This document shows, one piece after another, positions 29,601-64,000 of a stretch of DNA of 64,000 nucleotides; the first letter of the stretch is position 1, and every line of letters begins with the position of its first letter. Location of the stretch: the IMG/VR virus record IMGVR_UViG_3300013005_000001, positions 62,001 to 126,000 of that record; one strand, 5' to 3'. The notes under the pieces are model-generated. The model was not told where the DNA came from. It was given only the letters and a program-made list of their open reading frames with translations, and did no database searches. Made by a program: the position numbers and the translations under genes.

Positions 29601-29888
29601 TCATATTCCATCTTTGTTGATAGTTCTTCTAGGCTTTCTTTTAGCATTACCATAAGGTAAATAGCCAAGAGATACACGTTGTTCTTCTGTTTCGCCACCC
29701 CATATGCCATATTCAAGATTGTTGCGAGCATAAGCTCTACATTGAGTGACTACTGGACATTGGGCGCAAATAGTTAAAGCTTTTGCTTCTCGTTTTACTC
29801 TAGCTTGAGGGCGTTCGTTATAAAGCGGAAAGAATAAATCAGTTTGATTTTTACATGCCGCTGCATCGAACCATGAAGGGTGATACAT
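29601..29888 (-). CDS. whiB: WhiB-family Fe-S transcriptional regulator
   Basis: AAC...LFFP...ICAQCPV...C...GIWGG. Confidence 0.93.
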   Translation of the reverse strand: MYHPSWFDAAACKNQTDLFFPLYNERPQARVKREAKALTICAQCPVVTQCRAYARNNLEYGIWGGETEEQRVSLGYLPYGNAKRKPRRTINKDGI

Positions 29889-39019: not shown

Positions 39020-39213
39020 AATCCCTCCTTAGGATTAGTCATTGGTCCCTTCTTTTTGTATAAACTATTCCCTTATTAAAAAATAATTTACACAATTAGA
39101 ATATTTGATACTTGTATGTGTGAGTGCCAGCTGTTATATTTTCGAAGCCAGGCTGGCGCTGGTTCTTTTCAGGTATATAACTAAACCTGTTCTTAGTTAG
39201 CTTTGGAGCATTG

Positions 39214-41942: not shown

Positions 41943-42063
41943 AAAATTACCTTCTGTGTAGTGTTCCCTTCTTTTTTGTACGAACAAAAAAAGTGGATAC
42001 ATAGCAAAGGGGCCGGACTCTTGCGAGCCCGACCCCTAAATGCCGTGTCTTTTGTTGCTTATC

Positions 42064-48426: not shown

Positions 48427-48522
48427 GGATATCTCCTATGTGTTATAATTGTGATTAATTGTGAATAATTTTGAAAAAAGGTATATCTGAGGTATACCCT
48501 TCTTTTTGCTTATACCGCAGTG

Positions 48523-48765: not shown

Positions 48766-49067
48766 GATTTTCCTTTTGTGTTTGTGATTATTGGGTGTCT
48801 GTGTTTGTTCCTGGAATTATGAATTCTAGGATGTCTGTGATGAAATCGAGTAACCAATCAAGCATTTGTTTTCTCCTTTCCCTTCTTTTTTGTGGTTGCT
48901 GTCTGAGGAAGCATTTTAGAAGCTAGAAAGAAAAAACAAATACAACGGTCAATCACGCCACCTTTGAGGTGTGTAATTGCCGTTGTTATTGCTCTTTTGA
49001 TTAACGATTATATAAATGGTTGCTAAGAATGCGTAATTGCATACAAAGCCAAGCATAAACATTGCCA

Positions 49068-49672: not shown

Positions 49673-50245
49673 GGTATTCTCCTCCTTATAAAGAGATTTA
49701 GTGGTTAGGGATAAAAATAATAACAAGACACACCAGTGTGGATAGCCGGTCTAACTTAAGGGAAAGAACCGACTATCCACAACCTGGGAGGTGTCATGCA
49801 GAGATAGAGAGCAGTTATTTGCAGTGTCGTACTCAGGACACTCTATGTAAGTCTGACAGAAGACTCAGTTTCGACTGTCAGCTAGGGACATAATCAATCC
49901 CTAAGACCTATCGCCAAGAACCAGTCTCGATGATTTCGAGAATGATTCCACGTGGCTCAATGAACAAGTCACCGGCCGGAGAAATCCAGCGAATGATATC
50001 TAAGTTAGAAACAATGCTATCTGCTTCTGCGAGACGGGTAACAGTGTCATTGATAAGTCGCTCAAGTTTGGTAATGGACATGGTATTCCTCCTTGGAATG
50101 TTTTGGGCTTACACCCTTCTTTTTTGATAGAATTCTCTTTTGTATGCACTAATTGAAGGACTAGTGAGAAAAAAGGGGAAAGTCCCAACAGACCCGCACT
50201 TGTGGTACGGATCTGCTGGGACAAGGAACAAGGGACAAGAGGCGG

Positions 50246-50665
50246 TTAGGCCAAGACGTCATCTCCGTCGTCGTCACCGAGAAGAGCACGAAGCTCATCA
50301 GAGATAGACATTGTTGACTTGATGATTGTCAACTCGGACATTCCGTCAGCCCAACACGAGGCTTGCATCTCTTCGATCTTTTCGCCATCGTTGTTGATGT
50401 ACGAGTTGAGCTTTGGTTCTGTGATGATGATGTCGTCACAGGACAAGGCCAACTTAGATCCGTTCCGCTTAGCCAAGTTGAACGCCTTGGTGACCGCTTC
50501 GAGTTGATTTTCGAAGATTGTCATCGTGAGCTTGTTCACGTTGGACGCGTTCTTCTCGTCGAGGATGTTCTTTGACAAGCCGACCAAGACGGTGTAGAAC
50601 TGAGTTCCGTCCTTCTTGGTGTTGACTTTGGGTTGAGTGTTGATGAAGATAAGCTTCTTGGACAT
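50246..50665 (-). CDS. paralog family A protein (possible OB-fold/SSB-like), copy 1
   Basis: INTQP..KKDGT.FYTVLVGL...MTIF...ASCWADG, acidic tail. Confidence 0.7.
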   Translation of the reverse strand: MSKKLIFINTQPKVNTKKDGTQFYTVLVGLSKNILDEKNASNVNKLTMTIFENQLEAVTKAFNLAKRNGSKLALSCDDIIITEPKLNSYINNDGEKIEEMQASCWADGMSELTIIKSTMSISDELRALLGDDDGDDVLA

Positions 50666-50817
50666 GATTGAGACCTCCTAATGGTCGTTATGGATGAGGT
50701 AATCACCCTTCTTTTTAGACAGAAAGTCCTAGTTTAGAAGGGTATCTTGGGCATGTTATAGATTAAACACGCACTAAAGAGGCTTTAGAAGCAATATAAT
50801 ATTTGCTCCTATCATCT

Positions 50818-53196
50818 CTAGATTGAGTTAAGTGCTCGGATAAGCCAATCAATTGGTTGATTAGGGCTCTTTGCACTGAACGTGTACAACCACTGGTCGT
50901 GATTGGCCTTTGGATACTGACGCTTGGCAATATACGAGTGATAAGCCAGTGACAGTATCTTACGGTTCATGTAGTCGACACCCTTGTCTGGGTTGTTGTC
51001 GATACGAGTGAACAGATCGCACAAGTAATCTACCCATGCTTCTGCGGTCATGATGCTACGCTTGACAGTGAGCTTTTGGTGTTCTTGAGCTGCCTTAAGC
51101 AATTCTTCTTCTGTCCATTCGATATTGAACAGCACCTCTGGCTCAACAAGAGTTGTATTGAGATGGTCTGACATTTGAGAAACAGTGGTCCGCACCAGCA
51201 TTTCTCGCATTATGTGCATCTGACACCAAGGTGACTCTTCAACTGTAGTAGTCTCAAGGTCCTTAGCATGTGCTTCTGGCATACGAGTTACCATCCAGAA
51301 CATATCCATCTTGGTACCGTTAAGCCCATTTGTTTCACGGATTTGGCGATACAGTTCACCAACCCATTGTGCAATGAGCTTTACGTCAGCAACAGTAGCG
51401 AGTCCCTGTTCGATGCCATCAATGATCTCTTCGTTGCGAGCGACAGGATTCTTGATGTATTCGTTGATCAGAGCATGCCAAAGAATCTTAGGCAATACTG
51501 CAGAACCAACTCCACCAGGGAATGCAAGTGCTACAAGTCGGCTACGTCCTTCATCACCCAGAGAATACTCAGGATTGATCTTTAGAGTAGAACTACCAGG
51601 AAGGGTTCCGGGAACAACCAAATTGTTCTCTTCCAAGTACGAAGATTGAGGAACAGCCATAAACAGCTCCTCATAATCGATGACAGGTGGAAATGCAGTA
51701 TACCGATGGAATACTGGACCATAGTTCTCGATTGGAATCATAGACCATTCACCAAAGTCATTTGGGTTACGGAGGATGAACGCCATGAGCTTGATGTCTC
51801 CATCAGCAAAACGCACTAGTCGAACATGGATCTTCCATGTATCGTCTAAGTCATCTCCACCATGGTTGATGTGATTCTTCTCGAAGTACTTACCAGGTAC
51901 CGCAAAGCAATGTGTCTTCTTGTGGTAGTAGCCACAGTCATTATACACATTCTTGAAACCAAAGATCTCAAGAGCTTCTTGTGTCATCACGTGAGTTGCA
52001 TAGGCCCATTCAACTGGAAACCAATGATACTGCTTATGACGCCATACATTACCAATGCCTTCGCCTTCTTCGTAAGCACCAAGGAATGACCTCTTTAAGC
52101 CATTGACCGTTAACCAGCGAAGAGTCTGAGTTGCATCAAATGGTATTCCAGCCTGATCAAGATCACGAACAGCCTTCTGCACAATCTCAAGCGTAGACAC
52201 AGGTCGACGGAATTCATCTTCCTCGTTATCTTGATACTGGGCAACTGCATTATTATTATCCACCAGGGTAGTCATGAACTTGAATTGCTTACCTTCTGCA
52301 AGGTCAACTTTTGCTTGTTCAAGGGCACCTACTAGACCACGAATGACATCTTCTTGAGTATACAGACCATTTACCTTCTGGTAGATGGCCATAGTAAGGT
52401 CATCACTCTTGACAGGAATAGCCGAATACGACGGTTCGATTGTAGCAAACTGCCAACCCTTAGTGCTGATCTCAGGCTTGATGTTGGGACCAAAGGTCTT
52501 GATATCGTACCCATCCATCATCTTATCTGGGAGGATTAGAGCATTGCCCTTGATCAACCCATCTTTCATGAGGACTCGGATCTGAACTACTGATGTTTGA
52601 CCATCAAGGATTAGTGCAATCTGTTTGTTGATCCATTCACGTGATGCACGATGGTTACTTACAACACAGCGTATAGCAAAGCTTTGGCTGATTGCGGAGA
52701 TTCCATCTACATCACTATCGATGTACCCAAGATCTAGGTGGTCGATAGTTTGAACCTTGATGTTGCCATCCGGATCATATGTCCACATGCATGACATGCG
52801 AACAATTTCTGCCAATCGCTTGCTCATCTTCTTTGAGTTCTTGATCACAAGACCAACCTCATCGAGTCCAGCAAGCCACGTTGTCGTACGTCCACGATGG
52901 GGCTTCACACCTTTAATCCGTACTGTGTACTGATCTGATGAGTTGCTCCAACGCAGGATTTCTGAATTGGCTAAAACTGGCAGTGCTGTAGGATCCTGTG
53001 AAGGAACCCCAGTGTGCCAGCTCTTGTTTATCTTTCGCACTTCGATCCGGTAATGATCCGGAAAGAATTGCTCCAGAAAGGCGGGCCAATAAGGACCACC
53101 ATCAAACTCCTCAAGAACTTTATCGTTCTCAAGGAGAGGGAGTGCAGTGATAAGCCGGAACCAGCCATCATTGCGTTTGACAATACCATGAAACAT
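50818..53196 (-). CDS. putative single-subunit two-barrel RNA polymerase (RdRP/YonO-like), paralog 2
   Basis: SKRL, DGISAIS, QIRVLMKDGLIKG, NIKPE, SDDLT, GGDDLDD, LRNPN. Confidence 0.62.
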   Translation of the reverse strand: MFHGIVKRNDGWFRLITALPLLENDKVLEEFDGGPYWPAFLEQFFPDHYRIEVRKINKSWHTGVPSQDPTALPVLANSEILRWSNSSDQYTVRIKGVKPHRGRTTTWLAGLDEVGLVIKNSKKMSKRLAEIVRMSCMWTYDPDGNIKVQTIDHLDLGYIDSDVDGISAISQSFAIRCVVSNHRASREWINKQIALILDGQTSVVQIRVLMKDGLIKGNALILPDKMMDGYDIKTFGPNIKPEISTKGWQFATIEPSYSAIPVKSDDLTMAIYQKVNGLYTQEDVIRGLVGALEQAKVDLAEGKQFKFMTTLVDNNNAVAQYQDNEEDEFRRPVSTLEIVQKAVRDLDQAGIPFDATQTLRWLTVNGLKRSFLGAYEEGEGIGNVWRHKQYHWFPVEWAYATHVMTQEALEIFGFKNVYNDCGYYHKKTHCFAVPGKYFEKNHINHGGDDLDDTWKIHVRLVRFADGDIKLMAFILRNPNDFGEWSMIPIENYGPVFHRYTAFPPVIDYEELFMAVPQSSYLEENNLVVPGTLPGSSTLKINPEYSLGDEGRSRLVALAFPGGVGSAVLPKILWHALINEYIKNPVARNEEIIDGIEQGLATVADVKLIAQWVGELYRQIRETNGLNGTKMDMFWMVTRMPEAHAKDLETTTVEESPWCQMHIMREMLVRTTVSQMSDHLNTTLVEPEVLFNIEWTEEELLKAAQEHQKLTVKRSIMTAEAWVDYLCDLFTRIDNNPDKGVDYMNRKILSLAYHSYIAKRQYPKANHDQWLYTFSAKSPNQPIDWLIRALNSI

Positions 53197-53364
53197 GATA
53201 TCCTCGCTTTCTGTTGAATTGGAGGCTTCAACATAGCCTTTTGTTTTAGTGGATAGGTTCTAGGTTTATGGCCTGTAGTCTATCCATAAAGAGAAAACCC
53301 CTTTCGGGGTCTCCTCCTTCTTCTAACAGAATGCTGTTAGGTATAGTCCCGTTGGATCCAACGA

Positions 53365-53808
53365 CTAGAGGATGTCTCCATCTTCTTCGCCGTTGAACTC
53401 TTCGAGGAGCTTCCGCAGTTCCTCTGAGATGCCCATCGATGATCCGATGACGTCCAGAGTTCCTCCGTTAGCCCAGCATGAAGCCTTGAAGCCTGTAACG
53501 GCGACACCATCTTTGGTGACGAAGTTATTTGGCTTGATGTCGGTCAATGTGAACTCGTCACACTTTACGACCAGCTTCAACCCAGCTGCCTTTGCTGCTG
53601 CAAAAGACGCTGCCACGGTTGCAACCTTTTCAGGGAAGATTGTCATCTCCACTTTGAGGTTGGCCAACATGTCCGCAGAGACTCCCTTTGCAGAGAGTAC
53701 ATCCTTGGCAATCCCAATCAAGACGGTCCAGAACATAGTTCCGTCCTTCTTTGAGTAGGCACGTGGTGCTGTGTTGACGTACAAGTACGCCTGCTTTTCT
53801 ACTGACAT
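53365..53808 (-). CDS. paralog family A protein, copy 2
   Basis: VNTAP...KKDGTMFWTVLIG...EEDGDIL. Confidence 0.75.
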   Translation of the reverse strand: MSVEKQAYLYVNTAPRAYSKKDGTMFWTVLIGIAKDVLSAKGVSADMLANLKVEMTIFPEKVATVAASFAAAKAAGLKLVVKCDEFTLTDIKPNNFVTKDGVAVTGFKASCWANGGTLDVIGSSMGISEELRKLLEEFNGEEDGDIL

Positions 53809-54058
53809 GACAACCTCCAAGTTGTATGTAGAGGTGAATATTATTGTTTTAACACGATGTACTCACATCACCGTGCCCACACTTTAGTTATCACATCTCT
53901 CAATATGATCTGGTAGTAAGCACCAGGTTCCTCCTGTAGTTTCGGCTCAGGCCCCTAGGGTATGATCTAGGATCTACCCATAAAAGAAAAACCCCCCGAA
54001 GGGAGTTCTTCTTCTCTTCCAACAGAACGCTGCTGGGCATGGTCAGGTCGAATACCGA

Positions 54059-54325
54059 CTAGTGGCGGATAAGCACCACGTATGTCATCATCTTTGTGTT
54101 AACCCACTTGCCGTCGGTCCACGCAGAGGTGTATTTAACCCTGGTTGGTCGCTTTTCAGCAATGTTTCTGTTGTTCACAAGGAACAATTCTGCATCTGCT
54201 TGCTGGCTGAACCAGTAGATGGTGTATCCCTCATAGGACCTTGCGGTTGCGAAACCACCAGTGCCTGTCAGGAAAATGTCAGAGTTAAGGAACTCCGACC
54301 CATCATTTTTACTGAATTGGGGCAT
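54059..54325 (-). CDS. hypothetical protein
   Basis: AGGAGGAG RBS. Confidence 0.6.
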   Translation of the reverse strand: MPQFSKNDGSEFLNSDIFLTGTGGFATARSYEGYTIYWFSQQADAELFLVNNRNIAEKRPTRVKYTSAWTDGKWVNTKMMTYVVLIRH

Positions 54326-54566
54326 GACTCCTCCTAAAGTGTCATGTTGCATATGCACACCACGTGCATACGACTAACTATTTACTCGTTGACCTGGAGC
54401 TGCTAAGCCACAGGACCAGCATTAAATACTGGGTGGATATAGATCTAGGACCTACCCATAAAAAAAAGATTTAAGCCCTAGGTATAGGGTCACGTCCCAA
54501 TGTTTTAGAGATAGTTGTACTAGTGGTAGTTTTATTATTTAATAATATGATCCATGTCATGACGCA

Positions 54567-54812
54567 TCACTCCTCGATCTGATCGAAGAGACTTGGCTGG
54601 TGGAACCATGGGCAGACAGGAGTTGGCTGACCTTTTCTGTCATGCATATAGATGAACTGATGACACGCCCGGCACAAAACCATCTTATAAGGATGCCTTG
54701 ATGTGAACGTGTCATACTGGTAATCATCCAGTCCATGGGTACGACATTCATCGCATTGTTTGTAACCGCTGTATTCCCAACGACGGTTGCTTTTCTTTTT
54801 GTTGTATGACAT
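54567..54812 (-). CDS. small zinc-finger protein
   Basis: CDEC...CRAC; AAGGAG RBS. Confidence 0.55.
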   Translation of the reverse strand: MSYNKKKSNRRWEYSGYKQCDECRTHGLDDYQYDTFTSRHPYKMVLCRACHQFIYMHDRKGQPTPVCPWFHQPSLFDQIEE

Positions 54813-54850
54813 TTCTGTCTCCTTTTTGTTGTTGTTGTTTTTCATGTTAA

Positions 54851-56707
54851 TTACGCCCACCCTGCAATTTCTACGCTGAGTTTATCTTTCAAGAACTTAA
54901 TGATTGGCTTGCGTGTTTCCTCGGCAAGAGGCTGATTGTGCTTACCAAGAAGCTGAGTCATTGTGCCTTGAACCTCACCATTAAGTATTTGTAATGGCGT
55001 AGAACTCCTTCTTACTTCTGCGTGCCCAATCCAATTGCCTTCAACATCTTTGAAACCAATGATGATTGTCTGACCGTCGTAAACACGATCTGCGTAAGAG
55101 CCAATGCAATTGTTTTGAGTAGCTCCCCATTCAACAAGGTCATGCGTCATCTTAGGAACAATCATTTGAATCCCTTCTGCAATCCACTTTCCATCAAATT
55201 CTGCAAATGCTCTTAGGTAAGGAGTGTTTCGCAGCTTCTTGTTTTCTGTCTTGATCTTGTTGTACTCTGCAGTAACAAAGTCATGGATTTGTTCAACATT
55301 CATCCTTGATCGTGCTACGTGCTGCTTAATTGCAGTTCTGTGGTTACGGCCCTTGATTTGTGTAAACATGTGTGCTGCATCAACAGCGTGCTGCCCATTT
55401 AAATACAAATGACCAGGATCTTTGTCAGATGTAAACATTTGCAAGAGATATTCATCCTTATAACCAAAGTCCCGAAAGAATGCCTTAAAACGTTTTCTCA
55501 TTAAAGGACTTGAGTTATAGCGCATGTAGTGACACACTACGTCAAGATCTAACTTCTCTAGCACTTGAGGATTGAACCCACGGGCAATGATCAACAGGTT
55601 AATAGCTCCACGAAGATGATGGAGCGTATTGATCTTGTTTATGTCACCAAAGATCTTCTTAGTTACTCCGTGCGGATGCATGAAAGCCTTATTCAAGATT
55701 TTCTTAGTTGATGTCTCTCCACCAATCCAATAGATGTCAGATTGAGTAATTCCATTTGGGTACAGCCCTGCACACGTACCACCATACTCAGTTGGCATGT
55801 ACTTGAGGATTTTCAATACATCCTCTTCCTTAATCAACTGATCACGCAAACCAAGCACTGTCAGTTCGATTGTGTCATCCAGTGGAACCAATTTCTTTCT
55901 TGCCATCTGGCCGTAAATAAGACCCCAGATCGGTGTGCCTGTCTTTTTGTTCTTCCACATGAGACGGTACCCATTGTTGGTTTTGTTCATGAATAGAACT
56001 CCAGGCCACTTCTTTTGGTAGTGCTGACCCCTGGTGTTAATAGTTGCTGTTTTGAATTCAACAATCCAACCAGCTTTTTCACCAGGCATTTCCGAAACGT
56101 ACATCTCATTGATAGAGACGTAATCAAACAACTTGTGTTCCTCATATTCATCTCCATATGTTTGTTCAAATTTCAAGGCTCGTTTGGTGCGTTCCCCTTT
56201 GTTAACAACTCGAGTTGAGTATGCGCACAATGGAGAGAAGTTGTCTTCGCCGGAACCCAACAGTCCCAACTTTTCTACCTTCTCATTGAACTTTTTAATG
56301 GCATTTCTTGCATCCAAGTAGTTGTCATTAATAAGAGCCAATGACTCTATTACTTCAATCTTGGATTGGAACTCTTGCATTGAACTACCAGCTCGTGGGA
56401 AGGAACGATCATTGCCCACCATGGTCATAACACTTAAATGATGATCAATCTCAGCTCTACTCATTACTTGTTGGATCTGAGTGATATCAAGTATGGCTTT
56501 TGCCAAGTCCATTGAATTCATTTCTGCTGGATCCATGTTTGCAAACCAGATGTTATATTGCTCTAGCGTGCCTTTCTTTGTTTGAATTGTGAGCTTCATG
56601 GGCTCTACCTCTTTCTGTATAGGGAATGGGTTTTTCTCCTGCGGAAGCAGGATTGGTGGTTGTGGATAGTGGGTGGATGGGACATCAGTTTGCTCGAAAC
56701 TGCTCAT
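54851..56707 (-). CDS. PcfJ-like domain protein
   Basis: C-terminal VPK...DLVEWG..QNNCIGSY...V..G...I...Q..G.HN; alternative start at 56599. Confidence 0.8.
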   Translation of the reverse strand: MSSFEQTDVPSTHYPQPPILLPQEKNPFPIQKEVEPMKLTIQTKKGTLEQYNIWFANMDPAEMNSMDLAKAILDITQIQQVMSRAEIDHHLSVMTMVGNDRSFPRAGSSMQEFQSKIEVIESLALINDNYLDARNAIKKFNEKVEKLGLLGSGEDNFSPLCAYSTRVVNKGERTKRALKFEQTYGDEYEEHKLFDYVSINEMYVSEMPGEKAGWIVEFKTATINTRGQHYQKKWPGVLFMNKTNNGYRLMWKNKKTGTPIWGLIYGQMARKKLVPLDDTIELTVLGLRDQLIKEEDVLKILKYMPTEYGGTCAGLYPNGITQSDIYWIGGETSTKKILNKAFMHPHGVTKKIFGDINKINTLHHLRGAINLLIIARGFNPQVLEKLDLDVVCHYMRYNSSPLMRKRFKAFFRDFGYKDEYLLQMFTSDKDPGHLYLNGQHAVDAAHMFTQIKGRNHRTAIKQHVARSRMNVEQIHDFVTAEYNKIKTENKKLRNTPYLRAFAEFDGKWIAEGIQMIVPKMTHDLVEWGATQNNCIGSYADRVYDGQTIIIGFKDVEGNWIGHAEVRRSSTPLQILNGEVQGTMTQLLGKHNQPLAEETRKPIIKFLKDKLSVEIAGWA

Positions 56708-56829
56708 GGTTACCTCCATGTTGGGACCTGGCGAAGGTCTTGGTTCTAGCCATAAAAGAAAAACCCCCCGAAGGGAGTTCTTCTTCTCTTCCAACAGAAC
56801 GCTGCTGGGATGGTCAGGTTAAATACCGA

Positions 56830-57276
56830 CTAGAGGATGTCACCATCTTCTTCGTCATTGTACTCATCAAGAAGCTTCCGGAGCTCCTCTGAAACGCCCA
56901 TGGATGAACCAAGAACGTCAAGAGTCTTTTCTCCATTAGCCCAGCACGAAGCTGCAAAGCCATTAACCGCAACACCATTGTTATTGGTGTAGTTGTTTGG
57001 CTTTACTTCTGTAAGAGTGAAATCTTCACACTTCAGAACCAGCTTCAACCCAGCTGCTTTTGCCTTAGCAAATGCATTAGCCATCAATTCGAGCTTGTCG
57101 GGAAAGACTGTCATCTTTACCTTGAGCGTCTTGGCTTGTGCCTCGGAAACTCCCTTTGCAGAGAGCAAGTCCGGGGTAAGCCCAATGAGGACAGTCCAGA
57201 AAACTGTTCCATCCCCCTTGTTGTTAGGCGCTGGTGCTGTGTTGACGTACAGGTACGTCTTTTTTGTTTCTGACAT
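56830..57276 (-). CDS. paralog family A protein, copy 3
   Basis: Clearly similar to copy 2, same upstream TTGGAGGTTGTC RBS. Confidence 0.75.
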   Translation of the reverse strand: MSETKKTYLYVNTAPAPNNKGDGTVFWTVLIGLTPDLLSAKGVSEAQAKTLKVKMTVFPDKLELMANAFAKAKAAGLKLVLKCEDFTLTEVKPNNYTNNNGVAVNGFAASCWANGEKTLDVLGSSMGVSEELRKLLDEYNDEEDGDIL

Positions 57277-57493
57277 GACAACCTCCAAGTTGTATGTAAG
57301 ATGCGGATGTACAGAATGCACATACGACTACTATTTACTCGTTACAGGAGCTGTTAAGCCACTGTTGACCACACCAAAAGGTGCTGAGGTTGTAATCTAG
57401 TTACTACCCATAAAAGAAAAACCACACTGGATGTGTGGCTCTTCTTGACCGTTATAAATGCATAGGTGGTCAACCTTGGTCATGAGTTAAAAC

Positions 57494-57706
57494 TCAATTG
57501 TTTTGCAAGTCTGCAATCTGCTCACGGGTGAATGTGTCAAACACCCACCGGATTGCCTTGCGGGAACATTTTTCATAGCTCCACTTGTGCTTGGGGTCAC
57601 TTTGGATTTTGTCTGCAATCTTGATGATTGCCAAGCCGAGCTCAAGCCCGTATTGACGACAAATCCTTTCTTGTACTTGAGTTTCCTCAAATTGGGACTG
57701 GGACAT
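57494..57706 (-). CDS. hypothetical protein
   Basis: AAGGAG RBS in cassette. Confidence 0.6.
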   Translation of the reverse strand: MSQSQFEETQVQERICRQYGLELGLAIIKIADKIQSDPKHKWSYEKCSRKAIRWVFDTFTREQIADLQNN

Positions 57707-57819
57707 GGATTTCTCCTTTTGTTGGGCCCAAGCTTCATGCCTGGGGACTACCCATAAAAAAAAGATTTTGATATTATAGATATAGTTATAGGATTAAAGG
57801 CTAGTGTCACCCACATCAC

Positions 57820-58251
57820 CTACTGCCAAACCTTTGCATCGATTACATTCAACCCAAGGCTTTTCATCATCTCCAGGTTAGGATCTTCGTCATCCATAGC
57901 CCATTGCAGGTCATATTTCTTCAAAAGCATCTTGATCATGTGCTCTTTGTATTTCCTGCTACTAATTCCATTCCACTTATTAGGCCTGTGCCAGATCGAA
58001 TCAACCAAATGGTCAATCTCTAATTCCCGCAACTTCTTCCAAGTATTTGCCTTGCAACTTTGCCCTCTTGCAGTTAAGAACACAAGTTCATAACCCATCA
58101 ATTTAAAGGCTTTAAGCATAGCTATACCTCCATCTAGACCATTTGCATTTAGCGTTTCTTGAACCCACTGGTCATCACGCTCTGGTGACCAGTTTGGTGT
58201 GACACTCACAAGAGTGCCGTCGATGTCCACAAGGACAGCTTTTGGTTTCAT
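57820..58251 (-). CDS. HAD-family phosphatase (polynucleotide 3'-phosphatase-like)
   Basis: DIDGTL, LTARG, K, MDDED motifs. Confidence 0.8.
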   Translation of the reverse strand: MKPKAVLVDIDGTLVSVTPNWSPERDDQWVQETLNANGLDGGIAMLKAFKLMGYELVFLTARGQSCKANTWKKLRELEIDHLVDSIWHRPNKWNGISSRKYKEHMIKMLLKKYDLQWAMDDEDPNLEMMKSLGLNVIDAKVWQ

Positions 58252-58375
58252 GATTTTCTCCAATCACTAGGGTCTAGACTTGGTGCCTAGAAACTACCCA
58301 TAAAAGAAAAACTCCCCTAAGGGAGTCCTTCTTCTCTTCTAACAGAACGCTGTTAGGTATTGTCAATCAGTTGGA

Positions 58376-58702
58376 TTAGCTGTTAGGGCACTTACCCTCT
58401 ATGAGGAAGCGTTTGCTCCTCATGCATCCGTATTCCTCAACACGAGCCACTACCTTGTTGTAGTGAATCTTGTCTCCCGGCACACGTATGTATGCCTTGT
58501 TCATCAGTGCTCCAATGAGACGACCAACACCCCATGCGATGTCGCTCGCTTCATCTTTGAACTCTGCCATGCTCTTTGCTTCAAAAAGTTCGTAGATTTC
58601 TCCACGACGCTTTCCTTCCACAAGATCACGACTGAACAAGTCAGCAATGCCCTCCTTGAACGTGTGCACTTTCATGCATCCGCACCAATTTGTTGTTTCC
58701 AT
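58376..58702 (-). CDS. hypothetical protein, weak MazG-like acidic motif
   Basis: E..E...DEASD. Confidence 0.5.
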   Translation of the reverse strand: METTNWCGCMKVHTFKEGIADLFSRDLVEGKRRGEIYELFEAKSMAEFKDEASDIAWGVGRLIGALMNKAYIRVPGDKIHYNKVVARVEEYGCMRSKRFLIEGKCPNS

Positions 58703-58790
58703 TGTTACCTTTCTAAGCAGGGATCTCAACCCTACTCATAAAAAGAAAACGGCCCTATCTCCCGACAGTACCGTTCCCTTTTCCAACCAC

Positions 58791-59141
58791 TTAGTAGTCG
58801 CGCTGGTTGAAGACGCAATCTCCAGTAAATGGCCTATCACCGGTATTGTATTTACCATCTCGATGTTCAGTCATTACTAAAGGTTTTGTACCTTCAGACA
58901 GAATTTCCTTAATGTACTTTTCTAGCTGTTGGTACTGCTTCTCGTAGGATTGCTCATTACCAACCTGACTGTGACACTCAATGTTCTCAAGCATGTTGAC
59001 AATGGTCTTTTCAACATCTGCATAAACATCGGTGATGTCATAGCCCCAGAAAGCCCAGTAATTGACGTATGCACGCCCCTCACTGGTGTGACCCAGTATG
59101 ATGTTGATCATCGTAATGATGATTTCCTTTGGAATGAACAT
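58791..59141 (-). CDS. hypothetical protein
   Basis: GGAGG RBS in cassette. Confidence 0.6.
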   Translation of the reverse strand: MFIPKEIIITMINIILGHTSEGRAYVNYWAFWGYDITDVYADVEKTIVNMLENIECHSQVGNEQSYEKQYQQLEKYIKEILSEGTKPLVMTEHRDGKYNTGDRPFTGDCVFNQRDY

Positions 59142-59277
59142 GTTTTACCTCCATGTTCTAATGCCCACACCACGTTGGTGTAGGACTTGGTAGCTTTCAG
59201 ACTACCCATAAAGGAAAAACCACCCTGGATGGGTGGTATCCTTCAGGTTTACTTGATTCAACCTTGTTGCTACAGTT

Positions 59278-59769
59278 TTACTTGTGAGCTTTGTGTGCCT
59301 TTGCTGGGTAACTACCCCAGTTTGCGTTGCGGACGTGATCCCAGGTGCAGTGACGAGAACTGCAGACGCTGCACTTTGGATGCGTTGCGCCGTTTCTCAC
59401 TTTCTTCACTTGGACTCTTTTTGCGTCCGCCTTTTCCATTTCTTCCTGAAGAAGATACATCTCATCGAGCTTGGTGTTTGCTTCGATGTACTCTTTGCGG
59501 GCAGTGCCCAGAGAGATGTAGTAGTCCAGTTTGTCTGAGCAGAACCAGCAGTAGCCCTCGTTGTGACCACTTGTGTCCCACTCAGTGCTTCCGCACGCTT
59601 TGCACGGTGAGCATTCCTGAACTTCTTCTTCCTTGACACTCTTCAGTTCGTTGATGGTTTCCTTGATGGATTCCTTGACGAAGTGCTTGATTGCCCTTTG
59701 CTGGAAGTTGATCACCAGATTGGAGACGAAGATCGCCACCAGACTGAGAATCAAGAAAAGATCTGCCAT
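59278..59769 (-). CDS. membrane-anchored protein with CxxC zinc fingers
   Basis: N-terminal TM, CKAC, CWFC, CSVC. Confidence 0.6.
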   Translation of the reverse strand: MADLFLILSLVAIFVSNLVINFQQRAIKHFVKESIKETINELKSVKEEEVQECSPCKACGSTEWDTSGHNEGYCWFCSDKLDYYISLGTARKEYIEANTKLDEMYLLQEEMEKADAKRVQVKKVRNGATHPKCSVCSSRHCTWDHVRNANWGSYPAKAHKAHK

Positions 59770-59924
59770 AACAGATTCCTCCTTTTTTTGTGCCCACACC
59801 CCAATGGTGTAGGACTTGGCAGCTTTCAAACTACCCATAAAAGAAAAACTACACTGGATGTGTAGCATTCTTTTGAACCGTTATAATAATATGTATAGGT
59901 GGTTAACCTTGGTCATACTTCTCG

Positions 59925-60245
59925 TTAAGGAAAGAAAGAGTCTCCTATTTCTTCACATGGATCACACCACATACCGTAACGATCTACGGGTGTAGTGTGA
60001 CACTTGTGGCATTTTGCAATGCAGCCGACATGTGCAGAAAGAAACTGATTCCTCTCCTCTTCTGAAACCAGGACGTAGTAACTGTCGTCGTTTTCCCATT
60101 CCAACCTTTCAGTTGGGAAATGGTAACCACAGTTACATACCCATGTCACCGGTGCAAGCCTGCCATCAATGTCATACTCACTTTCCGGATAGTATCCAAA
60201 GCGAAGAGCCCAGATACCTTCTGGTAACTTGAAGTTCAAAGGCAT
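59925..60245 (-). CDS. Cys-rich zinc-finger protein
   Basis: CNC, CHKC, CDPC; AAGGAGG RBS. Confidence 0.6.
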   Translation of the reverse strand: MPLNFKLPEGIWALRFGYYPESEYDIDGRLAPVTWVCNCGYHFPTERLEWENDDSYYVLVSEEERNQFLSAHVGCIAKCHKCHTTPVDRYGMWCDPCEEIGDSFFP

Positions 60246-60351
60246 TTCTGCCTCCTTTCAGTTTTGCCCACATCGGAGTGATGCAGGACTTGGCAATCGT
60301 CAGACTACCCATAAAAGAAAAACCACACTGGCTGTGTGGCATTCTTTTGCA

Positions 60352-60624
60352 TCAAACTTCAACAATTTCCAATATGGATTGTGAATCCAACATGGTCAAG
60401 AGTCCGTCTGCTGCGTCGATGTATACAACTGTTCCAGCCAGAACTTGATGACACTCTGTGCCAAAATGTTCTTGATAGAATTCCATTGCTACATCGTTGG
60501 ATGGAATGATGAATTCGTCAATCACTTCTTCCTGATCGAAATCAGACCAGATATGAACGTAACGAATGTACACCCTTTTTCCTGCTTCCATTTTGCCTCC
60601 TTTCTCATTCGGTAATATGGACAT
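60352..60624 (-). CDS. hypothetical protein
   Basis: AGGAGG RBS. Confidence 0.55.
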   Translation of the reverse strand: MSILPNEKGGKMEAGKRVYIRYVHIWSDFDQEEVIDEFIIPSNDVAMEFYQEHFGTECHQVLAGTVVYIDAADGLLTMLDSQSILEIVEV

Positions 60625-60703
60625 GGACCTTCCTCCTTGAGTAATCGTCAGACTACCCATAAAAGAGAAACCTCAGGAACTAACCCTGAGGCTCTCTATC
60701 ATG

Positions 60704-60994
60704 TCACTTACTTATTGGAATCTGGATTGTTTGTCCAGGCCGCAAAGATGTGCCATTATGCACAACCAGGTAATCGGTTAGTGGTTGATATCCACTGCAA
60801 TTACCTGACTGCACTTGTTCTGATGCAATCCCTGTGATGGTGTCTCCCGACTTTACCACAACCTGGATTGCTTGTTTACAAAGGAACTTCTCTTGTAAAG
60901 AGTTCCCCAAAAATGAAATGACGTTAATCATTCCAATGATTGCAAGAACCAAGACAACAAGTGCCATGATTCTCCTGTACCAGTAGATGCTCAT
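60704..60994 (-). CDS. membrane-anchored LysM-domain protein
   Basis: TM helix then VVVKSGDTITGIA...N...LRPGQTIQIP. Confidence 0.8.
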   Translation of the reverse strand: MSIYWYRRIMALVVLVLAIIGMINVISFLGNSLQEKFLCKQAIQVVVKSGDTITGIASEQVQSGNCSGYQPLTDYLVVHNGTSLRPGQTIQIPISK

Positions 60995-61141
60995 CACATC
61001 TCCTTTCAGTTTTGCCCACACGGTTATGCAGGACTTGGTGGTCGTCAGACTACCCATAAAAGAAAAACACCATACTGGATGTATAGTGTTTCTCTATTAG
61101 TGATTGTTCTGTTGCCAGGCGTCACTACTGCCCCGTACTAA

Positions 61142-61318
61142 TTACAGATCCTGCCTGGTATTCAAATACTCTTTAAGCTGTTTAAGCTTCAAGTGCATTT
61201 CTTCCTTGCATTCATCTATATTTAGGTGATGGTTCTCATCGTGCATATACATGACTGACTGTTGCCATTCACATGTTGCACCATAAGCATCACTTAACAA
61301 GTCTGCTAGATTGTTCAT
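61142..61318 (-). CDS. 58 aa protein, tandem copy 1
   Basis: AGGAGG RBS; MNNLADLLSDAYGATCEWQ... Confidence 0.7.
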   Translation of the reverse strand: MNNLADLLSDAYGATCEWQQSVMYMHDENHHLNIDECKEEMHLKLKQLKEYLNTRQDL

Positions 61319-61450
61319 CTTGCTTCCTCCTTTCTGAATAGATGGCCTACCAAGCCTAGAATCTACCCATAAAAGAAAAACTACACTGGATGTGTAGTTC
61401 TTCTTCGTGATTGTTCTGTTGCCAGGCGTCACTACTGCCCCGTAGTCTAA

Positions 61451-61627
61451 TTACAGATCCTGCATGTTATCCAAATACTCTTTCAGGTTTTTAAGCCTCA
61501 AGCGCATTTCTTTATCACACTGGTCTATATTTAGGCGATGGTTCTCATCATGCATCCACATAACTGAATGTTGCCATTCACATGTTGCATTAAGAGCATC
61601 GCTTAACAAGGATGCTAGATTTTTCAT
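61451..61627 (-). CDS. 58 aa protein, tandem copy 2 (absent from the ORF track)
   Basis: MKNLASLLSDALNATCEWQHSVMWMHDENHRLNIDQCDKEMRLRLKNLKEYLDNMQDL. Confidence 0.7.
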   Translation of the reverse strand: MKNLASLLSDALNATCEWQHSVMWMHDENHRLNIDQCDKEMRLRLKNLKEYLDNMQDL

Positions 61628-61752
61628 CTTGCTTCCTCCTTTCTAGATAGATGGCCTACCAAGCCTAGAATCTATCCACAAAAAGAAAACCCCTTTCGGA
61701 GTCTTCTTAATCACCAATTATAATAATATTTATAGGATGGTGAATCCTTGGT

Positions 61753-62172
61753 CTAACCCTTCGTGAAGCCCTCGCTTGCGTTGAAGACATTGATTTCCAT
61801 CTTCGTGATGTGTTCTTCGTTATACATAACGACGATGTCATCACGCTGGATTTCTTTCTTCAGCCAAGCTTGCAGACATTCAGTCACAACATGATGACTG
61901 ATTTCTTTTGTTGGGCTCAGAAGACAAAACGGGTTGGTCTTTTCCCATTCGGAGTCATACTTGCTGACTACGGTAAACATCCAATTGAAGCCCTTTTCAA
62001 GGCCAATCAGCTCGACATCAACCCAGTTGGCAATGGGAACTACCTTTCCGTTGATGTATCGGCCCGGAGACACAATTTCATCAAGAGTCAGGTCGTAGCT
62101 TGCCCACAGAAGCAGTGCTCCAATAGGAAGATTCATGAGAGCTTCGACAAGCTCCCAATCCTTCTCGTCCAT
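61753..62172 (-). CDS. hypothetical protein
   Basis: AAGGA RBS in cassette. Confidence 0.6.
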   Translation of the reverse strand: MDEKDWELVEALMNLPIGALLLWASYDLTLDEIVSPGRYINGKVVPIANWVDVELIGLEKGFNWMFTVVSKYDSEWEKTNPFCLLSPTKEISHHVVTECLQAWLKKEIQRDDIVVMYNEEHITKMEINVFNASEGFTKG

Positions 62173-62542
62173 GGTTTCCTTTCGGGTGGCCCCAACCAAG
62201 GGACTCTTAGTCTACCCATAAAAGAAAAACCCAGGAACTGACCCTGGGTTATCTTTATTGTCTAGTTTTCGAGTAGCTTCGCCAATACATCTAGCACTAA
62301 ATCCCATTCTCCCCATTCTTGGTCTGCAACGGTCTTACGGTTAATTGCATCGGCTAACTTAGTTTTCGCTGATTCGATATCGGCTAGAACTTCTTTTGGC
62401 AATGACATGGATTTCTCCTCTGTTAGATTAGGCTTTCATACCTAATGACTATTCATAAAAGAAAAACCCCAGGGGATTGCCCTGAGGTTCTTCTTGACAG
62501 AGTATTTATTACACACCCCTGACTGGTGTGGGCACAAGTGGC

Positions 62543-62833
62543 CTACCGACTCAAGTCCGAAGGGCAGTCTCCAGAATGGCTAACCACTCTGTAGAGCTGC
62601 TCTCCGGTTGGTCCGAACTCCCTCTGAGGGTGGAAATTGCTCGGCTTCCGAAGAAGCTCAAGCAATCCTACCTTCTTATGGCAGAACAGACAACACTTCT
62701 CTGGTGAAAAGAGTCGAATTGTCATCAAATAACTCAAGGTTATCTGATTAAATTCGCTCTTCACCAAAGAAGACCGAAGTCGGTTGTGGAGAATGATCAT
62801 AAACCAGTAGACTCGAAAGTCTTCTGGTACCAT
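62543..62833 (-). CDS. hypothetical protein
   Basis: RBS before MVPEDF. Confidence 0.5.
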   Translation of the reverse strand: MVPEDFRVYWFMIILHNRLRSSLVKSEFNQITLSYLMTIRLFSPEKCCLFCHKKVGLLELLRKPSNFHPQREFGPTGEQLYRVVSHSGDCPSDLSR

Positions 62834-62970
62834 GATGATACCCCCTTTCTCCATGGTTTCACCCATGGGTAAAGGCGCACACCGGGTTGGTGCACGACTT
62901 GGCAACCTTGCGGCTACCCATAAAAGAAAAACCCAGGAACTGACCCTGGGTTATCTTTACGAGTTTTACA

Positions 62971-63291
62971 TCAAGCATCGTAGAAAAGCTTAATAAAGCC
63001 TTCTTCGATATCCTTTGTAGGAAGAACTTTAATTGAATAAAGATCATCTGCAAAGAGACTGATGTATCCACCTTCTTGGGCAACGGCCTGCAAATCATGC
63101 ACCCCCATAGGGACACAGACATACATGTCGTTTGGCAACGATACCAATGGATGCTTCTGGTTGTCCAGATAGCACCCGTCTAGCACTCGGCTGTGCGCCT
63201 GTGTGCATGACATGTGTACCTCCATAAGGGTGTCGCCCTCAAAGAAGAACACGTGGTACGTATTCCTAGAGTAAATGGTTACCTCTTCCAT
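62971..63291 (-). CDS. hypothetical protein
   Basis: AAGGAG RBS in cassette. Confidence 0.6.
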   Translation of the reverse strand: MEEVTIYSRNTYHVFFFEGDTLMEVHMSCTQAHSRVLDGCYLDNQKHPLVSLPNDMYVCVPMGVHDLQAVAQEGGYISLFADDLYSIKVLPTKDIEEGFIKLFYDA

Positions 63292-63502
63292 AATTGCTCC
63301 TTTCAGTTAGCAAGTAGGGGTTGCGTACACCGGTTGGTGCACGACTAAGTAGCTGTTGGACTACCTATAAAAGAAAAACGGACGCATACGAGACGCCCGC
63401 TTTCCTTACCTGTGATCATTCGGCTTCTTTTTTCTCACTTACTAGATCTTCTGTTGCCAGGCCAAAGATATGGCCCCGAATCAAATTCAATTAGCGATCA
63501 AC

Positions 63503-63688
63503 TCAGATGTGCTTCTTGATGGTCCTTGCTCCGAAGAACGAGGCAACCACAAGAACGCCCAACCAGTTAACCAAGCCAAGAACGATTGCAACAACCGTCC
63601 AAGCCCAGCTCACTGCAGGAGTCACCAAGAGAACAACCACAAGGATTGCAAACCTGTGCTCCCGGAGGAACGCTTTGATTTTGTTCAT
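63503..63688 (-). CDS. small membrane protein
   Basis: AAGGAGGT RBS, two TM helices. Confidence 0.6.
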   Translation of the reverse strand: MNKIKAFLREHRFAILVVVLLVTPAVSWAWTVVAIVLGLVNWLGVLVVASFFGARTIKKHI

Positions 63689-64000
63689 TTCACCTCCTTT
63701 CACAAAGATGAACGAGCGCATGCCGGAGTGGCACACGACTTAGCAACCTCTCGGCTACTCATAAAAGAAAAACACCACACTGGCTGTGTGGTGCCTCTTT
63801 ATCAGTGATTGTGATTAACAGAGCGTCACTACTGCTCCGGCTTAATACATGCAACTAACCGTTATATGAACGATCGCAGCTAGGGCAACGTGTTTCTCCA
63901 TTATCTGGGAACTCGTGTCCACACCACCTGCACTTAAGCTTGAGTAAAAGGCGCATCTAACCTCCTTTCTTTGGGCTCAGGCTTCCATACCTGATAACTA

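What the first reader, a model, noticed from the sequence alone, without database searches (positions are those of the whole stretch)
58276..63760. Second box at a fixed 11 nt spacing plus a covarying leader hairpin
Seen: GGGTAG-N11-C(C/T)(A/T)AGTC(C/G)T in 7 cassettes (motifs at 59202, 59831, 60305, 61050, 62914, 63361, 63755) and N10 at 58294. It is followed by a hairpin with compensatory changes (TACACC/GGTGTG, TGCATC/GATGTG, TGTGCC/GGCATG). The same AGTCGT plus hairpin occurs about 75 nt from the motif at 54370 and 57324. Inference: a bipartite promoter with a structured 5' end, or a conserved RNA element for processing, translation or protein binding.
Basis: seen in the sequence. Interest (0 to 1): 0.65.

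Follow-up and report, generated by a model that had tools for sequence, protein, structure and literature searches.

The report
Structured leaders of phage early-gene cassettes
The "second box at 11 nt" is the far side of an RNA hairpin that folds back on the conserved GGGUAG, followed by a second hairpin; together they form a modular 5' leader on small early genes of an uncultured 210-kb lake phage that probably carries its own RNA polymerases.

Summary
On the minus strand, GGGTAG-N11-CYWAGTCST occurs 7 times between 59.1 and 63.8 kb, against 0 expected. Each copy lies in a single-gene cassette: GC hairpin terminator, T-rich tract, GGGTAG, leader, SD, ATG. The genome has 24 such cassettes, all in one 11-kb array.

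The fixed spacing is not a promoter spacer. GGUAG pairs with the CUACC/UUGCC half of the "box" to form hairpin P1. AAGU is a linker. CCU/CGU opens hairpin P2. Across 20 leaders (7 here, 13 from related IMG/VR phages):
- 98.3% of cells pair.
- 8 of 15 pairs show double-sided changes.
- 0 of 500 shuffles reach this.
- 22.5% of cells are G-U, so the fold is specific to the sense RNA.

Insertion variants keep the P1 closing helix. All other leader classes also pair GGGUAG. Homologous genes carry different leader classes.

The best reading is a non-sigma70 promoter core that overlaps the start site, with the RNA beginning at GGG, and a 5'-terminal stem acting as an mRNA stabiliser. P2 is a conserved hairpin whose role is still inferred. 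The start site itself is unproven, because no RNA runs exist.

The last gene of the array encodes a QDE-1-like two-barrel RNA polymerase. A probable second one lies among the giant late genes. The closest analogue is the PeSL promoter-terminator cassette of T4-type phages.

The parts
53280..64000 (-). Array of about 21 single-gene cassettes. Each is a GC hairpin terminator, TTTTYYTTTTAT, GGGTAG, leader, SD, ATG. The array runs on past the window end to genome position about 126,630.
   Evidence: There are 24 motif copies in the 210-kb genome, all at 115,291-126,009 on the minus strand. Gene and leader map. Terminator-like sites number 32 against 9.5+-3.3 in shuffles; sigma70-like sites number 14 against 16.7.
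60259..60310 (-). Class A leader, used as the reference copy. P1 is 60309-60303 with 60298-60292. The AAGU linker is 60291-60288. P2 is 60287-60280 with 60274-60267. The ATG is at 60245.
   Evidence: R1 covariance model 70.4 bits, E 3e-16. Fold. Pair counts.
61007..61055 (-). Class A leader with a short P2 and one A-C mismatch in P1.
   Evidence: R1 52 bits.
59785..59836 (-). Class A leader.
   Evidence: R1 67.4 bits.
59156..59207 (-). Class A leader.
   Evidence: R1 67 bits.
62868..62919 (-). Class A leader of the CGU...GCG P2 subtype. P1 has 7 bp and a GCAA loop.
   Evidence: R1 65.6 bits.
63316..63366 (-). Class A leader with the AGGTAG variant; A1 pairs with U.
   Evidence: R1 50.9 bits.
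63709..63760 (-). Class A leader with the GAGTAG variant; A2 is compensated by U in the partner.
   Evidence: R1 55.3 bits.
60618..60658 (-). Leader with P1 only. The SD follows directly and there is no P2.
   Evidence: R1 20.2 bits, E 0.004.
58264..58299 (-). GGG is closed by CCC around an inner hairpin.
57293..57332 (-). P2-like hairpin directly after AGUCGU, inside a 133-nt class C leader whose GGGTAG is at 57409.
54339..54378 (-). P2-like hairpin directly after AGUCGU, inside a 132-nt class C leader whose GGGTAG is at 54457.
50818..53196 (-). Last gene of the array (GGATAG motif at 53285). It encodes a 792-aa single-subunit two-barrel RNA polymerase, P0001.
   Evidence: AF2 pLDDT 88.6. Foldseek: QDE-1 E 3e-8 prob 1.0, then RDR2, phage P32 gp64 and P74 gp62. 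Invariant GGxDLDD and RNPxD..E. No Pfam, PHROG or PDB sequence hit.
50706..50716 (-). First of six AAAAAGAAGGG motifs. The others are at 50114-50124, 48880-48890, 48497-48507, 41966-41976 and 39047-39057. This is a second promoter-like class that begins right after the polymerase gene.
   Evidence: The motif is kept, in the same position, in relatives whose polymerase is 36-59% identical.

Best explanation
Each cassette is an independent early transcription unit of a jumbo phage.

Shown:
- The 18-nt core TTTTYYTTTTAT|GGGTAG sits directly after the intrinsic terminator of the previous gene.
- GGGUAG is present in the sense RNA and is always base-paired with a downstream segment.
- In class A leaders it forms a 5-7 bp hairpin P1 with CUACC/UUGCC. 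A 4-nt AAGU linker follows, then an 8-bp hairpin P2 (C-N-U-R-C-A-Y-C with G-R-U-G-U-R-N'-G) and GCA, about 10-40 nt before the SD.
- These leaders are modules that are exchanged between genes.

Inferred:
- The core is a short promoter that overlaps the start site and is read by a non-sigma70 polymerase. This is most likely a phage two-barrel RNAP delivered with the DNA; the candidate is the 1356-aa ORF P0122.
- Transcription starts at the first G, so at most one nucleotide at the 5' end is unpaired.
- P1 then works as a 5'-terminal stem-loop that shields the mRNA from 5'-end-dependent decay (RNase E/J, RppH).
- P2, with its conserved closing pairs, tandem U-G/G-U and fixed flanks but free loop, is a further stability element or a protein-binding element shared by a subset of early mRNAs. 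It does not cover the SD.
For: Pattern: 7 hits against 0 expected.

Structure on 20 leaders from this and related phages:
- 98.3% of cells pair, against 31-51% when the partners are slid by 1-3 columns.
- 8 of 15 pairs change on both sides.
- 0 of 500 shuffles reach the observed values.
- 22.5% of cells are G-U.
- The antisense strand would pair only 76.8%.

P1 keeps its closing helix around 8-nt and about 30-nt insertions, at L019:769 and L007:208.

Motif variants are compensated. GGATAG has its own Watson-Crick complement downstream in 6 of 7 cases and the canonical one in 0 of 7. GAATAG/CTATTC, TGGTAG/CTACCA, AGGTAG and GAGTAG behave likewise.

At least 4 of the first 6 nt are paired in 87.5% of 112 unique cassettes. 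The figure is 62% with shuffled downstream sequence and 19% at a mock 5' end.

The core persists without a terminator hairpin, at 57759 and 54463. Positions -12 to +6 are conserved.

There is no sigma70-like enrichment, while terminators are enriched.

Leaders are not tied to the coding sequence: one protein family carries A, B and C leaders.

The phage encodes a two-barrel RNAP and a probable second one.

Precedents:
- Thermus phage P23-45 uses a virion and a non-virion two-barrel RNAP with two distinct promoter motifs (PMC10770324).
- The phiKZ late promoter is TATG with +1 at the G (PMC4666361).
- 5'-terminal stem-loops stabilise mRNA (Emory 1992 and Bouvet & Belasco 1992, listed in PMC3997798).
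Against: No transcript ends were mapped. All 24 runs that hold this DNA are DNA libraries.

A cleavage site would give the same mature 5' end.

GGGUAG is G-rich and pairs in 62% of shuffled controls, so that statistic is weak on its own.

In a more distant relative (L060) the GGG is not kept (TTTTA-NN-RATAG), so +1 = G is not universal.

The polymerase that reads the core is not identified. P0122 has only modest structural support (Z 5.9, pLDDT 71).

No function of P2 has been tested.

Many of the 20 leaders are paralogous or orthologous copies, so the shuffle test overstates independence.
Confidence: 0.55

Rival explanations
1. Processing cassette. The array is transcribed as long read-through RNAs and an endonuclease cuts in the single-stranded UUUUAU|GGGUAG. 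The terminator-like hairpin is left as a 3' protector, and the P1-closed end as the 5' end of the next mRNA.
For: This model gives the same mature ends. The conserved AU-rich single-stranded tract lies between two stable hairpins. No recognisable promoter type is present. Upstream of the first cassette lies a distinct, lineage-wide conserved element that could hold the only promoter.
Against: The hairpins are textbook intrinsic terminators with U5 tracts, and they are enriched 3-fold, which argues against long read-through. Two cassettes keep the core without any hairpin. The polymerase gene and the AAAAGAAGGG class show that this phage uses short GGG-ending promoter-like motifs elsewhere.
Confidence: 0.2
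2. Bipartite DNA promoter. A polymerase contacts GGGTAG and a second box CCAAGTCCT held 11 bp away.
For: The spacing is fixed in 7 of 7 copies in this window.
Against: - The box covaries with GGGTAG as a helix.
- The spacing changes by 8 and about 30 nt in relatives, with pairing kept.
- 17 other cassettes of the same array have the core without the box.
- Abundant G-U pairs make the complementarity strand-specific.
- The same P2 module sits 80 nt away in class C leaders.
Confidence: 0.05
3. The two-hairpin leader is a cis-acting regulatory RNA rather than a stabiliser. One version is a put/nut-like element that makes the transcribing polymerase read through the array's terminators. The other is an operator for a phage RNA-binding protein that shuts off a subset of early mRNAs.
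For: Two adjacent hairpins joined by a short conserved linker lie right after the start. The flanks and lower stem of P2 are conserved while the loop is free. Only a subset of cassettes (7 of 24) carries it. Terminators follow every gene.
Against: No partner protein has been identified. The SD is not occluded. The loops vary in length and sequence, unlike boxB. Nothing shows read-through.
Confidence: 0.15
4. The similarity is only historical. The leaders are copies spread by cassette duplication and recombination at the shared core, as with PeSL elements, and the structure has no function of its own.
For: Cassettes and leaders are shuffled between genes and phages. Paralogous cassettes exist, for example 61627-61451 and 61318-61142.
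Against: Compensatory double changes and maintained pairing (98.3%), at 64% mean column identity, indicate selection on the fold. Slid controls fall to 31-51%.
Confidence: 0.05

Closest known systems
PeSL (promoter-early stem-loop) cassettes of T4-type phages (PMC2839356, PMC4122927)
   Same: A small composite element, made of a stem-loop terminator and an early promoter, is repeated between small orphan genes in one plastic region. It flanks single-gene modules that are shuffled between related phages.
   Different: The promoter here has no sigma70 -35/-10; it is a T-rich tract plus GGGTAG overlapping the presumed start. The element continues into modular structured 5' leaders whose 5' arm is the motif itself. 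Recombination at the element was not tested. The host is probably an actinobacterium and the phage is not T4-like.
5'-terminal stem-loop mRNA stabilisers (ompA and papA leaders in E. coli; 5' stabilisers in B. subtilis)
   Same: The hairpin begins within 0-1 nt of the presumed 5' end. It lies upstream of an accessible SD and does not depend on which gene follows.
   Different: The 5' end and the half-life effect are not measured. The 5' arm is a conserved promoter-proximal hexamer shared by more than 100 cassettes. A second conserved hairpin follows.
Promoters of phage-encoded non-canonical RNAPs: P23-45 vRNAP/nvRNAP motifs (PMC10770324) and the phiKZ late TATG with +1 at G (PMC4666361)
   Same: These are short phage-specific motifs at or overlapping the start site. 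There are two motif classes in one genome, matched by two phage polymerases. The early region is dense in such motifs and terminators.
   Different: The sequences are unrelated. No biochemical or TSS data exist here. The polymerases are only 10-12% identical to solved ones.
HK022 put and lambda nut antitermination RNAs
   Same: Promoter-proximal structured RNA (two stem-loops for put) lies upstream of terminators.
   Different: There is no sequence or loop conservation of the boxB type. Every cassette has its own start motif, so antitermination is not required. This was recalled from memory and not tested.

Membership tests
PeSL promoter-terminator cassette | Stem-loop acting as terminator next to the promoter, repeated in intergenic regions | tested here: met
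   GC hairpin plus U tract lies at a fixed 12 nt before GGG. Terminator-like sites: 32 against 9.5+-3.3 expected.
PeSL promoter-terminator cassette | Promoter identical to the host sigma70 consensus with an AT-rich upstream region | tested here: not met
   No sigma70-like site coincides with the motif, and such sites are not enriched: 14 against 16.7.
PeSL promoter-terminator cassette | Flanks orphan genes in a hyperplastic region and mediates modular shuffling | tested here: inconclusive
   Orphan small genes and a different cassette content in relatives were seen, with leaders swapped between homologous genes. Recombination junctions and mini-circles were not examined.
5'-terminal stem-loop stabiliser | Stable hairpin with no more than about 2-4 unpaired nt at the mRNA 5' end | tested here: inconclusive
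   The hairpin starts at nt 1-2 of GGGUAG in nearly all leaders. The 5' end is not mapped because no RNA runs exist.
5'-terminal stem-loop stabiliser | Removal shortens the mRNA half-life | not testable with these tools
   This needs reporter or half-life assays.
Bipartite promoter | Two DNA boxes whose spacing, not complementarity, is constrained | tested here: not met
   The boxes are complementary and covary. The spacing varies by 8 and about 30 nt with pairing kept.
N4-type DNA-hairpin promoter | Hairpin formed by the template strand upstream of +1 | tested here: not met
   22.5% G-U cells mean the template strand would carry C-A mismatches; it would pair only 76.8%.
Any Rfam family | Match reaching the family's gathering score | tested here: not met
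   Only three sub-threshold chance-level hits were found in 50-64 kb, none on a leader.
Two-barrel (DPBB) single-subunit RNA polymerase (for P0001) | QDE-1-like fold with two double-psi beta-barrels | tested here: met
   pLDDT 88.6. The 15 best PDB matches are 14 QDE-1 chains and maize RDR2 (E 3e-8 to 7e-6, prob 1.0). Phage gp64 and gp62 follow.
Two-barrel (DPBB) single-subunit RNA polymerase (for P0001) | Metal-binding DxDxD loop | tested here: inconclusive
   The invariant motif is GGxDLDD, that is DxDD and not DxDxD, in 33 homologues. The same variant occurs in P0122.

The most novel reading that the evidence does not exclude
The GGGUAG core with its modular hairpin leaders is the recognition-and-control system of a virion-delivered two-barrel RNA polymerase. 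In this reading the nascent P1-P2 RNA acts in cis on that polymerase, or on a phage RNA-binding protein, to decide whether it stops at the next cassette's terminator. The leader classes A, B and C would then encode different expression programmes within one early array.
Probability: 0.12. Interest if true: 0.8.

Novelty: new variant of a known kind. Interest (0 to 1): 0.55.

Why it matters
This gives a concrete, testable transcription map for an uncultured lineage of about 200-kb lake phages, probably actinophages. The map has four parts:
- a dense array of terminator-plus-start-motif cassettes;
- a covariation-supported family of modular 5' leader RNAs absent from Rfam;
- two promoter-like motif classes;
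- two candidate phage two-barrel RNA polymerases.

The PeSL idea of mobile regulatory cassettes is thereby extended to a system that does not use sigma70 promoters and in which the conserved DNA motif doubles as one arm of an RNA helix. The leaders would also be useful parts for expression in actinobacterial hosts if their stabilising role holds.

Tried and rejected
- **RNA evidence.** The only run search found 24 lake-water DNA libraries and no RNA. Read laying was therefore not used and no start site could be mapped.
- **Rfam.** Nothing was found on the leaders.
- **Phage database.** Blastn found no match. P0001 found no tblastn match.
- **Known polymerase families in six frames.** PF00940, PF00623 and PF00562 gave no match.
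- **Giant ORFs of 3534, 2221 and 2071 aa.** No PDB sequence match was found for the 3534- and 2221-aa ORFs. None of the three has profile similarity to P0001. PHROGs names none of them a polymerase.
- **Atlas feature search of P0001.** No usable hit.
- **Upstream ORF starting at the ATG inside TTTTATGGGTAG, or a leaderless mRNA.** Rejected for three reasons. The ATG is lost in ATA and GTG variants and in the L060 lineage. Insertions are not multiples of three. The conservation pattern is that of helices with G-U pairs.
- **Integron-like attC reading of the hairpins.** Rejected, because they are short GC stems with U tracts.
- **Formal pair count for class B leaders.** Abandoned, because MAFFT did not keep the inner hairpins in register. 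Only single-sequence folds are offered for that class.
- **P0122 structure.** Foldseek gave no hit at E <= 0.001.
Full report
**What the sequence is.** The window is bases 62,001-126,000 of a single 210,302-bp IMG/VR virus record with terminal repeats, rated 100% complete. It is found in lake-water metagenomes. It has six tRNA genes in the window and very few Pfam or PHROG matches. It has no DNA match among 50,697 deposited phages. It carries a WhiB gene at window 29670-29873, minus strand. WhiB rang only in Corynebacterium among the 14 control genomes, so an actinobacterial host is likely. This is an inference.

**Check of the observation.** All genes between 50 and 64 kb are on the minus strand.
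- Read on that strand, every small gene is preceded by one cassette: a GC-rich hairpin, then TTTTYYTTTTAT, GGGTAG, a leader of 35-170 nt, a strong SD and the start codon.
- The motif occurs 24 times in the genome. All copies lie at genome 115,291-126,009 and all are on the minus strand.
- The eighth case (N10, 58294) belongs to a different leader class. There the apparent CCAAGTC is the loop plus 3' arm of another hairpin.
- The two distant AGTCGT-plus-hairpin sites are real. They lie about 80 nt into long leaders.

**What the second box is.** Folding shows that GGUAG(NN) pairs with (NN)CURCC, that is, with the first half of the box. This forms a 5-7 bp hairpin P1 with a 4-6 nt loop. AAGU is left single-stranded. 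CCU/CGU opens an 8-bp hairpin P2 that closes with GGG/GCG and is followed by CA.

An exact scan of IMG/VR for the 17-nt core returned 32 loci, about 20 of them from related phages with the same cassette arrays. I aligned the 7 local leaders with 13 from relatives (alignment A1, mean column identity 64%). On this alignment:
- The two helices are paired in 98.3% of 298 cells.
- 8 of 15 pairs change on both sides. For example, the second P2 pair is C-G 12, G-C 6, A-U 1 and G-U 1, and the seventh is C-G 11, U-A 7, A-U 1 and U-G 1.
- None of 500 shuffles reaches any of the five measures.
- Sliding the partners by 1-3 columns drops pairing to 31-51%.
- 22.5% of cells are G-U. The opposite strand would pair only 76.8%.

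The structure therefore belongs to the sense RNA, not to DNA and not to the template strand.

Two relatives carry insertions inside P1, 8 nt in L019:769 and about 30 nt in L007:208, and both keep the closing helix. This is what a helix predicts and the opposite of what a fixed promoter spacer predicts.

A covariance model (R1) finds the seven copies plus one P1-only leader in this genome. It finds 2-4 copies in four of five related records and none in more distant relatives.

**Generalisation.** Class A is one of at least three leader classes. In class B, GGG(U) is closed by (A)CCC around an inner hairpin. In others, GGGUAGAU pairs with AUCUAUYC. Class C has a long structured leader that ends in the same AGUC-hairpin-GCA module as P2.
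- Across 112 unique cassettes, at least four of the first six nucleotides are paired in 87.5%. This compares with 62% when the downstream sequence is shuffled and 19% at a mock 5' end. This statistic is modest on its own.
- Variants of the hexamer are compensated. GGATAG has its own complement downstream in 6 of 7 cases and the canonical one in 0 of 7. GAATAG/CUAUUC, UGGUAG/CUACCA, AGGUAG and GAGUAG follow suit.
- Leader class is not linked to the coding sequence. One protein family carries A, B and C leaders, and three other families also mix classes.

The leaders are thus modules under selection for their fold, not passengers of gene duplication.

**How it most likely works.** What is shown is that GGGUAG is transcribed and sits in a helix at the start of every leader. 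The core -12 to +6 is conserved independently of the terminator hairpin, since two cassettes lack the hairpin. Intrinsic terminators are enriched threefold, and sigma70-like promoters are neither enriched nor coincident with the motif.

What I infer is that the core is a short promoter overlapping the start and that RNA begins at the first G. P1 then leaves at most one unpaired 5' nucleotide. This is the geometry of known 5'-terminal stem-loop stabilisers (Emory et al. 1992 and Bouvet & Belasco 1992, cited in PMC3997798).

P2 has conserved flanks and a conserved lower stem, including tandem U-G/G-U, but a free loop. It does not cover the SD. A stability or protein-binding role is my guess, not a result.

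The main rival is an endonucleolytic processing site in the U-rich tract, which would give the same mature ends. Only 5'-end chemistry can separate the two models, and no RNA libraries hold this phage.

**Which polymerase.** No T7-like or multisubunit RNAP domains are detectable.
- The last gene of the array, preceded by a GGATAG core, encodes a 792-aa orphan protein, P0001. It has 120 metagenomic homologues.
- Its model (pLDDT 88.6) matches the two-barrel polymerases QDE-1 and RDR2 at probability 1.0, followed by Thermus phage gp64 and gp62.
- Its invariant motifs are GGxDLDD and RNPxD..E.
- The same two motifs occur in a 1356-aa ORF, P0122, among the giant late genes at genome 185,906-189,973, outside the window. 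hhalign gives E 9e-4.
- The P0122 model is weaker (pLDDT 71). Its two best matches among 48,161 chains are QDE-1 (Z 5.9, 376 residues aligned) and phage P74 gp62 (Z 5.7). It is therefore a probable second polymerase, not a certain one.

A second motif, AAAAAGAAGGG, occurs six times, starting right after the P0001 gene. It is kept, in the same place, in relatives whose P0001 homologue is only 36-59% identical. The array core, in contrast, drifts: it is TTTTA-NN-RATAG in L060 and absent in L061.

By analogy with P23-45, where a virion and a non-virion two-barrel RNAP each read their own motif (PMC10770324), I propose the following. The array core is read by an injected enzyme (P0122) or by the host enzyme, and AAAAGAAGGG is read by P0001. 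This is inference only.

**Comparison and novelty.** The architecture is closest to the PeSL cassettes of T4-type phages: a terminator stem-loop plus an early promoter between orphan genes, driving modular shuffling (PMC2839356 and PMC4122927). It fails the sigma70 criterion, and it adds structured, exchangeable leaders whose 5' arm is the conserved motif. The phiKZ late promoter (TATG with +1 at G) shows that such start-overlapping promoters exist. No Rfam family matches. I rate this a new variant of a known kind, of moderate interest in itself. The interest is raised by the phage's unusual transcription machinery.

**Limits.** The sequences are related copies, so the shuffle statistics overstate independence. 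The TSS, half-life effects, polymerase specificity and any P2 partner are all untested.

Noticed in passing
window 50818-53196 (-): A 792-aa orphan protein is a QDE-1/RDR2-like two-barrel single-subunit RNA polymerase with an invariant GGxDLDD loop (DxDD rather than DxDxD). It has 120 unnamed metagenomic homologues.
   Followed up: yes
genome 185,906-189,973 (+), outside the window (L034:6673-10740): A 1356-aa ORF among the giant late genes shares GGFDLDD and RQPTSFQE with the polymerase above. It weakly matches QDE-1 and phage gp62 by structure. Homologues are about 1750 aa, so the gene may be split here. It is a candidate virion RNA polymerase.
   Followed up: partly
window 39047-39057, 41966-41976, 48497-48507, 48880-48890, 50114-50124, 50706-50716 (-): A second intergenic motif, AAAAAGAAGGG, begins right after the polymerase gene. 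It is conserved in the same position in relatives whose polymerase is only 36-59% identical. It is possibly the promoter of that polymerase.
   Followed up: partly
window 61109-61131 and 61416-61438 (-); a variant lies near 63800-63840; also L005 and L060: A conserved element of about 35 nt (GCAGTAGTGACGCCTGGCAACAG...) lies in the 3' UTR, between the stop codon and the terminator, of several cassettes. It is shared with distant relatives. It is the source of the weak alpha_tmRNA Rfam hits.
   Followed up: partly
genome about 126,770-126,800 (-), just beyond the window end (L036 about 775-800); also L060, L061, L062, L005 and L019: A conserved element, TTTAACGAG-SSYAC-GGGGGTATACC, stands at the head of the early array in every lineage, including those with a different or no cassette core. 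It could be the first promoter or another entry-related site.
   Followed up: no
window 29670-29873 (-): A WhiB-like gene (PF02467, 60 bits) is present. A relative (L061) also has one. Together with helicase hits to Gordonia and Mycobacterium phages, this points to an actinobacterial host.
   Followed up: partly
window 50000-64000: G+C content rises from about 30-40% over most of the window to 42-47% in the array and polymerase region, with negative GC skew.
   Followed up: no
window 61451-61627 and 61142-61318 (-): Two adjacent paralogous 58-aa genes have near-identical class B leaders. This looks like a recent tandem cassette duplication.
   Followed up: no
window 54851-56707 (-): The only other large array gene (618 aa) has a C-terminal PcfJ-like domain (PF14284).
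   Followed up: no
L060 (contig of a relative whose polymerase is 46% identical): The cassette core has drifted to TTTTA-NN-(G/A)ATAG. The terminator hairpin, and the pairing of the hexamer with a downstream complement, are both kept.
   Followed up: partly
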